A DNA stretch of 63,567 bases, counting the filler, from Octopus bimaculoides (taxonomy: Eukaryota): NCBI RefSeq assembly GCF_001194135.2. It is 7 parts of 6 records of this genome, joined end to end, with 100 filler letters (N's around TTAATTAATTAA, not from the genome) between each part and the next. Parts side by side here need not be neighbours in the genome. Positions count along the whole stretch, not along the records: positions 1 to 20,051 come from NC_069010.1; 6 more parts are not named here. One strand, given 5' to 3'. Positions 19,783-19,909 of this stretch are shown here, in pieces. The position numbers and the translations under genes were made by a program. The stretch's first letter is position 1; each line of letters opens with the position of its first letter. The notes beneath the pieces are model-generated. The model made no database searches. It was not told the origin of the DNA and worked only from the letters and a program-made list of their open reading frames with translations.

Positions 19783-19909
19783 ACAATAAACCAGAAGTAG
19801 TTTCCATGGCAATTGGTCACCAGTGCCTGACCCCCAGCCACCTGAGTACCGATGGTCGATGTCTAATTGACAGCGATGCAGCAGTGCTGGCGTGCAGAGC
19901 CTTTCGCAG
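19783..19909 (+). CDS. ADAR/ADAD-like gene exon: deaminase motif region with degenerate catalytic site; last exon before the scaffold end
   Basis: Acceptor TGTTCTTCAG| (phase 1), donor AG|GTAAAG (phase 2). DNKPEVVSMAIGHQCLTPSHLSTDGRCLIDSDAAVLACRAFR aligns without gaps to ADAR2 [39 protein letters not shown]. Confidence 0.93.

What the first reader, a model, noticed from the sequence alone, without database searches (positions are those of the whole stretch)
19783..19909. Catalytic site rewritten: C-H-A-E becomes S-D-A-A, with further RNA/IP6-contact changes, predicting a pseudo-deaminase
Seen: the ungapped alignment to human ADAR2 gives T375>H, K376>Q, C393>S, H394>D, E396>A and R400>C, while G374, C377, D392, A395 and R401 are kept. 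Established: H394 is a Zn ligand, E396 is the catalytic proton shuttle (E396A is the standard inactivating mutation), T375/K376 line the RNA-binding face, and R400/R401 bind IP6. Vertebrate ADADs keep the His but lose the Glu, so loss of both is a different pattern. Inference: an intact frame with clean splice sites but a dead active site suggests a retained non-catalytic role, such as a competitor or heterodimer partner that tunes editing by ADAR1/2, or a dsRNA scaffold.
Basis: partly seen in the sequence, partly recalled or inferred. Interest (0 to 1): 0.8.

Follow-up and report, generated by a model that had tools for sequence, protein, structure and literature searches.

The report
Octopus ADAD-like dead deaminase exon

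Summary
Window 19783-19909 (+) is a spliced, expressed 127-nt exon encoding the start of an ADAR-type deaminase domain. Against human ADAR2 it reads G374, T375H, K376Q, C377, D392, C393S, H394D, A395, E396A, R400C, R401. It is not a sequencing error: three RNA assemblies, raw RNA reads and ten DNA runs carry it. Octopus sinensis, O. vulgaris and Argonauta hians orthologues have the same DSDAAVLACR. It is not a decaying pseudogene: dN/dS against O. sinensis is 0.10 over 260 codons.

The gene is the octopus orthologue of the molluscan ADAD-like gene, called sqADAR/D-like in squid. It has two dsRNA-binding motifs plus a deaminase domain. In octopods the other two zinc ligands are also gone (C451S, C516T), while 9-10 of 12 IP6 contacts and the fold are kept.

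The pseudo-deaminase reading is therefore supported, but it is published. The squid protein has no deaminase activity in vitro and, in excess, inhibits squid ADAR2 (PMC10278661). ADADs are described as catalytically inactivated (PMC9989829). Loss of both His and Glu is not a new pattern: C. elegans ADR-1, Aplysia and Haliotis ADAD-like proteins show it. The only increment is that H394D and R400C are shared by octopods, whereas squid-type sequences keep His and Arg-Arg. Interest is low.

The parts
19783..19909 (+). Exon 7 (127 nt) of the ADAD-like / ADAR/D-like gene, encoding the first part of the deaminase domain with the degenerate DSDAA motif. This is the finding.
   Evidence: Translation. 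Pfam A_deamin E=7e-10. RNA contigs and raw reads cover 19782-19912. Same size as O. sinensis exon 7, with AG/GT flanks.
19875..19883 (+). Codons GAT GCA GCA = D-A-A, in place of the H394-A395-E396 zinc-ligand / proton-shuttle motif.
   Evidence: A squid-type transcript has CAT GCC GCT (H-A-A) at the same place.
19893..19898 (+). Codons TGC AGA = C-R, in place of the IP6-contacting R400-R401.
19818..19823 (+). Codons CAC CAG = H-Q, in place of the RNA-contacting T375-K376.
18618..18753 (+). Exon 6 (136 nt): linker and N-terminal edge of the deaminase domain (EVIPEGKSLGQQFTDLVYNHLYMYLEQFSVLRYRRKSVAAVILVS).
   Evidence: The 30 nt of mRNA upstream of exon 7 map to 18723-18752. Same size as O. sinensis exon 6.
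17832..17955 (+). Exon 5 (124 nt): C-terminal half of dsRBM2, with an intact KKEAK motif.
   Evidence: RNA contigs cover 17831-17956 and are contiguous in contig coordinates with exons 6 and 7. Pfam dsrm E=2.7e-8 on the spliced exons 4-7.
16515..16665 (+). Exon 4 (151 nt): linker and N-terminal half of dsRBM2.
   Evidence: tblastn of P0001. blastn of O. sinensis exon 4, with AG/GT flanks. No RNA reads were laid on this exon.
15424..16373 (.). Assembly gap (N run) that most probably hides exon 3 (184 nt, C-terminal half of dsRBM1).
   Evidence: The mRNA continues after exon 2 with CTCACCTTCCATGAAGTCGATGTCCATCCT, which is absent from the window. In O. sinensis exon 3 lies 1.3 kb after exon 2.
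14387..14617 (+). Exon 2 (231 nt), with the start codon at 14402 (MYQGMESGQKHYEKK...) and the N-terminal half of dsRBM1.
   Evidence: RNA contigs and raw reads cover 14386-14617. There is an in-frame stop 36 nt upstream of the ATG in the spliced mRNA. tblastn.
10607..10694 (+). Non-coding 5' exon. Its 3' end at 10694 is firm. Its 5' end is approximate and is longer in one contig.
   Evidence: The 30 nt of mRNA before exon 2 map to 10665-10694, followed by gtaag. The X14 contig has 88 nt before exon 2. The X18 contig has 1741 nt before it, which I did not resolve.

Best explanation
The finding is exon 7 of the octopus orthologue of the molluscan ADAD-like gene. NCBI annotates it as 'adenosine deaminase domain-containing protein 1' in O. 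sinensis, and it was published as sqADAR/D-like in squid. The protein has two dsRNA-binding motifs and an ADAR-fold deaminase domain.

Shown here:
- In octopods the whole catalytic centre is gone: H394D, E396A, C451S, C516T.
- Residues that contact the flipped nucleotide and RNA backbone have also changed (T375H, K376Q, E488-loop).
- The IP6-binding core (9-10 of 12 direct ligands) and the predicted fold are retained.
- The gene is spliced, expressed and under strong purifying selection.

Inferred mechanism: the protein cannot deaminate adenosine. It acts as a dsRNA-binding pseudo-enzyme that occupies or organises dsRNA. It thereby competes with, or modulates access of, active ADARs, mainly ADAR2. 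The deaminase-like domain would serve as a structural or RNA/protein-interaction module. This mechanism rests on the squid biochemistry and on analogy with ADAD1/2, ADAR3 and ADR-1.
For: - Identity and reality of the exon.
- Gene model: six window exons with AG/GT borders and sizes identical to O. sinensis exons 2 and 4-7; four have RNA support.
- Orthologues: O. sinensis, O. vulgaris and Argonauta all read DSDAAVLACR. Two squid-type transcripts read DSHA[A/S]VIARR.
- Synteny: a DPH3-type CSL zinc-finger gene lies upstream on the opposite strand in the window, in Argonauta and in a squid-type RNA contig.
- Domains of the full-length orthologue: 2 x dsrm plus A_deamin at E=1.5e-70.
- Key residues: S451, T516, K519, K522 and 9-10 of 12 IP6 ligands.
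- Selection: window vs O. sinensis has 39 synonymous and 16 non-synonymous differences, dS 0.27, dN 0.027, omega 0.10. It is also 0.10 in exons 6-7. Organism B has 2 synonymous and 0 non-synonymous changes in the exon. O. sinensis vs Argonauta deaminase domain has pS 0.75 and pN 0.18.
- Fold: AF2 mean pLDDT 81.9, with the deaminase domain mostly above 85. Foldseek top hits are human ADAR1 and ADAR2 deaminase domains, TM 0.84-0.88.
- Tree: the cephalopod clade has 100% support, sits inside molluscan ADAD-like sequences, and is apart from ADAR1 and ADAR2.
- Literature: sqADAR/D-like is inactive on dsRNA and inhibits sqADAR2a/b, but not sqADAR1, when in excess (PMC10278661). ADADs are classed as catalytically inactivated (PMC9989829).
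Against: - No octopus protein has been assayed. Inactivity is inferred from residues and from the squid orthologue, which differs at H394 and R400.
- The squid inhibition needed an excess of protein in vitro, and the squid gene is expressed at low level, so competition in vivo is unproven.
- Exons 8-12 are outside the window. C451 and C516 were read from congeneric orthologues, not from this genome.
- The ADAD grouping with vertebrate ADAD2 has only 67% bootstrap support in a simple NJ tree.
- The tissue of expression is unknown here because run names are coded.
Confidence: 0.88

Rival explanations
1. Local sequencing or assembly error: the true codon is His (CAT) and Glu, and the gene is an ordinary active ADAR.
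For: H to D needs only one C>G change. The assembly is gap-rich.
Against: RNA contigs from three runs and raw RNA reads show no variant in the exon. Ten DNA runs hold all sampled words. A second species' contig (organism B) differs only at two synonymous sites. O. sinensis, O. vulgaris and Argonauta encode the same DSDAAVLACR.
Confidence: 0.01
2. A decaying, transcribed pseudogene of an ADAR paralogue, with no protein function.
For: All catalytic residues are lost. Published surveys of the O. bimaculoides gene models reported only 2 ADAR-family sequences. The motif is absent from Table S2 of PMC9989829.
Against: The reading frame is open across all recovered exons, with canonical splice sites. 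Full-length ORFs exist in three other octopods and in squid-type transcripts. Omega is 0.10. Synonymous sites are saturated while pN is 0.18 between Octopus and Argonauta. The fold is predicted with confidence.
Confidence: 0.02
3. A still-active enzyme with a rebuilt metal or catalytic site (for example Asp394 plus the new Cys at position 517), acting on a substrate other than dsRNA adenosine.
For: Asp can ligate zinc. Octopods have a Cys next to the lost C516 (MSTCDK). The domain is strongly conserved.
Against: Three of three Zn ligands and the proton-shuttle Glu are replaced, and Ser451 and Thr516 are poor Zn ligands. The squid orthologue, which still has His394, shows no deaminase activity. 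The RNA-contact residues T375, K376 and the E488 loop have changed.
Confidence: 0.04
4. An obligate heterodimer partner of ADAR1 or ADAR2 through the deaminase-domain dimer interface, rather than an RNA competitor or scaffold.
For: Asymmetric deaminase-domain dimers exist in ADAR2 and ADAR1 structures (PDB 6vff and 9b83 appear among the fold hits). The squid protein affects sqADAR2 activity.
Against: The TWDG stretch that aligns to the ADAR2 dimer helix is not conserved in any ADAD-like sequence: octopus TMDI, Argonauta gapped, squid-type LLT. The role of TWDG is from my own knowledge of the ADAR2 dimer work. No interaction data exist.
Confidence: 0.05

Closest known systems
sqADAR/D-like of Doryteuthis pealeii (PMC10278661)
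   Same: - Architecture of two dsRBMs plus a deaminase domain, about 630 aa, with a fragmented gene of 11-12 coding exons.
- E396A, with C451 and C516 lost.
- Most IP6 ligands kept, including R522K and S531A/C.
- Groups with the octopod proteins at 100% bootstrap, via two squid-type transcripts with the same residue pattern.
   Different: - Squid keeps H394 (H311) and R400/R401 (R317/R318). Octopods have D394 and C400.
- Position 451 is S in D. pealeii, T or A in the two squid-type transcripts, and S in octopods.
- Position 516 is A in D. pealeii, I or V in the squid-type transcripts, and T in octopods.
- Only the squid protein has been assayed.
Molluscan and vertebrate ADAD proteins (ADAD1/TENR, ADAD2), classed as 'catalytically inactivated ADAD' in PMC9989829
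   Same: - A deaminase domain without the catalytic Glu, plus dsRBM(s).
- NCBI names the O. sinensis orthologue ADAD1.
- The NJ tree places cephalopod sequences inside molluscan ADAD-like sequences, with a vertebrate ADAD2 as the next branch.
   Different: - The one vertebrate ADAD2 aligned here keeps His394.
- Vertebrate ADADs are known to me as testis factors. Tissue specificity of the octopus gene was not determined.
- The relationship to vertebrate ADADs has only modest support (67%).
C. elegans ADR-1
   Same: - A catalytically dead ADAR-family protein with two dsRBMs.
- Key residues D / I / - / T at H394/E396/C451/C516 (Table S2 of PMC9989829), the same His-to-Asp and Cys516-to-Thr replacements as in octopods.
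- From my own knowledge, it regulates editing by the active ADR-2 through RNA binding.
   Different: A nematode lineage protein. Orthology was not tested, and the shared residues are most simply convergent.
Vertebrate ADAR3 (ADARB2)
   Same: An inactive family member with two dsRBMs that can inhibit ADAR2 (as cited in PMC10278661).
   Different: ADAR3 keeps H, E and both Cys (Table 1 of PMC10278661). It also has an Arg-rich ssRNA-binding domain and is an ADAR2 paralogue, not an ADAD-like protein.

Membership tests
ADAR-type deaminase fold (Pfam A_deamin, PF02137) | Significant match to the A_deamin profile | tested here: met
   The window peptide matches at E=7e-10 over profile positions 1-46. 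The full-length O. sinensis orthologue matches at E=1.5e-70 over positions 1-329. Foldseek TM to ADAR1 and ADAR2 deaminase domains is 0.84-0.88.
Catalytically active ADAR (ADAR1/ADAR2 type) | Zn ligands H394, C451 and C516 | tested here: not met
   D394 is in the window. S451 and T516 are in the O. sinensis and Argonauta orthologues. Residues 451 and 516 of this genome lie outside the window.
Catalytically active ADAR (ADAR1/ADAR2 type) | Proton-shuttle Glu (E396) in the HAE motif | tested here: not met
   The codon is GCA (Ala) at 19881-19883, and is shared by all cephalopod sequences except one with Ser.
Catalytically active ADAR (ADAR1/ADAR2 type) | Adenosine deaminase activity on dsRNA | not testable with these tools
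   Only the squid orthologue has been assayed, and it was inactive (PMC10278661).
ADAD / cephalopod ADAR/D-like | Deaminase domain lacking catalytic residues, combined with N-terminal dsRBM(s) | tested here: met
   There are two dsrm hits in the O. sinensis orthologue. dsRBM2 is found in window exons 4-5 and half of dsRBM1 in exon 2.
ADAD / cephalopod ADAR/D-like | Phylogenetic grouping with ADAD-like proteins rather than ADAR1 or ADAR2 | tested here: met
   In an NJ tree with 100 bootstraps, octopods plus squid-type sequences group at 100%. They sit within molluscan ADAD-like sequences. The ADAR1 pair groups at 96%, with ADAR2 as outgroup. The node that includes vertebrate ADAD2 has only 67%.
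ADAD / cephalopod ADAR/D-like | Orthology to the published D. pealeii sqADAR/D-like sequence itself | tested here: inconclusive
   The published sequence was not at hand. Two unnamed squid-type transcripts (P0001 and P0008) reproduce its pattern (H kept, E396A/S, RR, 451/516 lost). P0008's numbering is within +1 of it. Exon number (11-12) and the DPH3 neighbour agree.
IP6-dependent ADAR/ADAT1 fold | Basic and aromatic residues lining the buried IP6 site | tested here: met
   Of 12 direct ligands, 9 are identical in O. sinensis and 10 in Argonauta. The exceptions are R400C, R522K and, in O. sinensis, S531C. Actual IP6 binding is not testable here.
Vertebrate ADAR3 | Intact H/E/C/C residues plus an N-terminal Arg-rich domain | tested here: not met
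   The catalytic residues are lost. The tree does not place the protein with ADAR2-type sequences.

The most novel reading that the evidence does not exclude
The octopod lineage (Octopus plus Argonauta) went one step further than squids. It removed the last zinc ligand (H394D) and one IP6-contacting arginine (R400C), and it gained a Cys at position 517. This could mark a lineage-specific change in how the pseudo-deaminase domain is stabilised or what it binds. That change could in turn contribute to differences in how editing is regulated between octopuses and squids.
Probability: 0.12. Interest if true: 0.45.

Novelty: already known. Interest (0 to 1): 0.18.

Why it matters
Coleoid cephalopods recode their neural transcriptome by A-to-I editing more than any other animals, so every ADAR-family protein is a candidate regulator. 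This exon shows that octopuses carry a conserved, expressed third family member that cannot be an enzyme. That is the same conclusion already reached experimentally for squid.

The practical value is modest:
- It documents the gene in an octopus genome whose assembly gap hides exon 3. The gap may explain why two published surveys did not list the gene.
- It shows that octopods have lost all three zinc ligands.
- It gives exon coordinates that would help design knockouts or expression probes.

Tried and rejected
- Protein word-index searches with the 41-aa exon peptide and with a 134-aa spliced peptide found nothing. The exhaustive HMMER scan of representatives then gave P0001. Using P0001 as the query retrieved the octopod orthologues.
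I used shorter stretches instead.
I prepared concatenated stop-free segments but did not need them once tblastn with P0001 located the exons.
- I looked for the 5' end next to the DPH3-like gene, because a squid-type RNA contig joins the two genes. The octopus ADAD-like contigs do not map there. The 5' exon is at ...10694 instead.
- The homologue of the O. sinensis isoform-X1 first coding exon is at 908-922. The RNA contigs examined do not use it.
- dS between Octopus and Argonauta, or between Octopus and squid-type sequences, is saturated, so no omega is quoted for those pairs.
- I considered that A-to-I recoding might restore the site. It cannot: GAU can only become GGU, and no editing at 10% or more was seen in the exon.

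Full report
**1. Observation**

The stretch 19783-19909 on the + strand is bounded by a polypyrimidine tract with cag on the left and gtaaag on the right. In frame 3 it translates without stops to NKPEVVSMAIGHQCLTPSHLSTDGRCLIDSDAAVLACRAFR. Joined to its neighbouring exon, it matches the first 46 positions of Pfam A_deamin at E=7e-10. It also matches the solved deaminase domains of Hydra ADAR, human ADAR1, C. elegans adr-2 and human ADAR2.

In the 1zy7 chain, index + 298 gives the human ADAR2 residue number.

**2. The sequence is real and the exon is used**

- Logan RNA contigs from three runs and raw reads from a 2026 RNA-seq run cover precisely 19782-19912. None shows a variant at 10% or more in the exon.
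- The reads continue upstream into sequence that maps to 18723-18752. Downstream they continue into ...GTACCTGTATTTAGAACTCCAGCGCTACTTGGC (RRYLYLELQRYLA), which lies outside the window.
- Ten DNA runs of the same organism hold all sampled 31-mers.
- A contig from a second, closely related organism differs in the exon only at 19784 and 19814. Both changes are synonymous. The flanking intron carries three substitutions and a 30-nt deletion.
- One run of organism A carries 19906 G>A, an Arg-to-His polymorphism at a non-critical position.

**3. Gene model**

An exhaustive HMMER scan with the spliced 87-aa peptide found a 622-aa protein, P0001, from RNA assemblies. It is 61% identical over the region. 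tblastn of P0001 against the window located the other exons. I then recovered the O. sinensis genomic locus (L008) and the Argonauta hians locus (L009), and their exact exon chains.

O. sinensis has 12 coding exons of 15, 231, 184, 151, 124, 136, 127, 168, 110, 186, 235 and 247 nt. The window contains the following parts of the gene:

| Part | Window coordinates | Notes |
|---|---|---|
| 5' exon | ends at 10694 | non-coding |
| Exon 2 | 14387-14617 | ATG at 14402; in-frame stop 36 nt upstream |
| Exon 3 | not present | its mRNA sequence is absent from the window; it almost certainly lies in the N gap 15424-16373 |
| Exon 4 | 16515-16665 | |
| Exon 5 | 17832-17955 | RNA-supported |
| Exon 6 | 18618-18753 | |
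| Exon 7 | 19783-19909 | the finding |

Every recovered exon has AG/GT borders and is the same size as its O. sinensis counterpart. Exons 8-12 lie beyond the piece.

**4. What the gene is**

The full-length O. sinensis orthologue (P0009) is 637 aa. NCBI names it 'adenosine deaminase domain-containing protein 1 isoform X1'. It has two dsrm domains and a complete A_deamin domain at E=1.5e-70.

Relatives retrieved were:
- Argonauta hians 'ADAD1-like' and the O. vulgaris orthologue.
- Two unnamed squid-type transcripts (P0001, P0008).
- ADAD-like proteins of Haliotis, Pinctada, Potamilus and Physella, further unnamed relatives (P0012, P0014), and more distant ADAR1, ADAR2 and ADAD2 sequences.

In an NJ tree of the deaminase domain, octopods plus squid-type sequences form a clade with 100% support. 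That clade sits inside the molluscan ADAD-like group. It is apart from an ADAR1 pair (96%) and from ADAR2-type sequences. A vertebrate ADAD2 joins the group with 67% support.

Synteny agrees. A DPH3-type CSL zinc-finger gene lies upstream on the opposite strand in three places:
- the window, with its ORF at 3307-3549 (Pfam E=5.7e-24);
- Argonauta;
- a squid-type RNA contig, head-to-head with the ADAD-like gene.

The window is collinear with L008 at about 80-86% identity in non-coding DNA. It is therefore an Octopus species distinct from O. sinensis. I infer it is O. bimaculoides from the 2015 DNA and RNA studies, but run names are coded and I could not confirm this.

**5. State of the active site across species**

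| Group | 375/376 | 393-396 | 400/401 | 451 | 516/517 | 519/522 | IP6 ligands kept |
|---|---|---|---|---|---|---|---|
| Octopods (window, O. sinensis, O. vulgaris, Argonauta) | H, Q | S-D-A-A | C, R | S | T, C | K, K | 9-10 of 12 |
| Squid-type transcripts (P0001, P0008) | n.a. | H394 kept; A or S at 396 | R, R | T or A | I or V | n.a. | 10 of 12 |
| Published D. pealeii sqADAR/D-like | n.a. | H311, A313 | R317, R318 | S368 | A443 | n.a. | n.a. |

- The D. pealeii values are from Table 1 of PMC10278661.
- H394D and R400C are therefore shared by Octopus and Argonauta, and are absent from squid-type sequences.
- Loss of the His is not unique. Haliotis and Potamilus have Tyr, Physella has Ser, and the unnamed relative P0014 has Thr plus R400C.
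- Table S2 of PMC9989829 lists Aplysia ADAD1 as T/L/D/Q and C. elegans ADR-1 as D/I/-/T at H394/E396/C451/C516.
- The stretch aligned to the ADAR2 TWDG dimer helix and the stretch aligned to the E488 flipping loop are not conserved in the ADAD-like proteins.

**6. Selection and fold**

- Window versus O. sinensis, over 260 aligned codons: 39 synonymous and 16 non-synonymous differences, dS 0.27, dN 0.027, omega 0.10.
- The two deaminase-domain exons alone give omega 0.10 over 87 codons.
- Between O. sinensis and Argonauta, synonymous sites are saturated (pS 0.75), while pN in the deaminase domain is 0.18.
- An AlphaFold2 model of the O. sinensis protein has mean pLDDT 81.9, with the deaminase domain mostly above 85-95.
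- Its best structural matches are human ADAR1 and ADAR2 deaminase domains, with TM normalised to target of 0.84-0.88.

This is a constrained, folded protein and not a decaying pseudogene.

**7. Mechanism**

Shown here: all three zinc ligands and the proton-shuttle Glu are replaced. The RNA-contact residues T375 and K376 are changed. The dsRBMs keep the KKEAK motif. The IP6 pocket and the fold are largely retained.

From the literature: purified sqADAR/D-like does not convert A to I in a 711-bp duplex, even at 5-fold excess. Its mRNA is not edited. In excess it blocks sqADAR2a and sqADAR2b but not sqADAR1. It is expressed at low levels in nervous tissue and gill (PMC10278661). PMC9989829 treats ADADs as catalytically inactivated and places them as sister to ADAR1s.

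Inferred: the octopus protein is a dsRNA-binding pseudo-deaminase that acts by occupying or organising dsRNA, with competition against ADAR2 as the best-supported mode. A heterodimer role through the canonical interface is not supported by sequence. A-to-I recoding cannot restore the site (GAU can only become GGU), and no editing was seen in the exon.

**8. Novelty**

The kind of protein, its presence in cephalopods and its inactivity are all published, and the orthologues are annotated in NCBI. What I did not find stated in the papers I could read is that octopods have also lost His394 and Arg400.

Two published surveys appear not to list this octopus gene. One counted only 2 ADAR-family gene models for O. 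bimaculoides (PMC6651903). The motif DSDAAVLACR is absent from the supplementary tables of PMC9989829. The assembly gap that hides exon 3 may be the reason. These are small additions. The finding is correct but ordinary, and I score interest at 0.18.

Noticed in passing
window 3253-3763, minus strand (ORF 3307-3549): There is a DPH3/KTI11-type CSL zinc-finger gene ([32 protein letters not shown]...; Pfam Zn_ribbon_CSL E=5.7e-24), and RNA contigs cover it. The same gene lies upstream and divergent from the ADAD-like gene in Argonauta (L009 807-1061). It sits head-to-head with it, 43 nt apart, in a squid-type RNA contig (L002 752-1009). This is a conserved neighbour pair.
   Followed up: partly
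window 14795-15423, running into the N gap 15424-16373: A 24-nt minisatellite (GGCCACATTCTAATGCCCCAGCAC, about 26 copies) lies in intron 2. It is also present at the same place in O. sinensis (L008 31519-31886). It abuts the assembly gap that hides exon 3.
   Followed up: partly
window 17883: A>G appears in 18 of 43 raw RNA reads of run X24, but not in the RNA contigs of three other runs. It is synonymous (GCA>GCG, Ala in dsRBM2). It could be a heterozygous SNP or an A-to-I editing site. The squid paper reports no editing of this mRNA.
   Followed up: no
window 19906: G>A appears in the contig of run X11 (same organism label). It changes Arg to His at the position aligned to hADAR2 L404, and is a likely coding polymorphism.
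   Followed up: no
window 908-922: This is the homologue (ATGAGGAAAAAGAAG, with AG/GT flanks) of the 15-nt first coding exon of the O. sinensis isoform X1 model. It lies upstream of the DPH3-like gene. The RNA contigs examined use a different, non-coding 5' exon ending at 10694.
   Followed up: partly
window ~8950-10694 (inferred): The 3860-nt RNA contig of run X18 carries 1741 nt upstream of exon 2, against 88 nt in run X14. I did not resolve whether this is a longer 5' exon, an unspliced precursor or a chimeric assembly.
   Followed up: no
window 97-290, 990-1170, 12799-13139, 17100-17140, 17400-17450, 18060-18180, 3050-3155, 4070-4150: These are copies of dispersed short repeats, with many copies also in L008. 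RNA word depths reach the thousands to hundreds of thousands, so the repeat families are abundantly transcribed genome-wide.
   Followed up: no
P0011 (O. vulgaris) versus P0009 (O. sinensis): The O. vulgaris model jumps from ...ACRAFRR directly to PSALLTHEDNE. It omits about 66 residues, including the C451 region. This looks like an annotation or assembly omission, not biology.
   Followed up: no
P0016, P0017 (bryozoans Watersipora and Bugula): These proteins branch with the ADAD-like group in the NJ tree (weak support). Yet they keep H394, E396, C451 and C516, so they may represent still-active members of that lineage.
   Followed up: no
window 3618-3763, plus strand: A 1190-nt RNA contig of run X14 ends with this segment. 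This suggests another transcript starts beside the DPH3-like gene. Argonauta has a 102-aa gene model between DPH3 and the ADAD-like gene.
   Followed up: no
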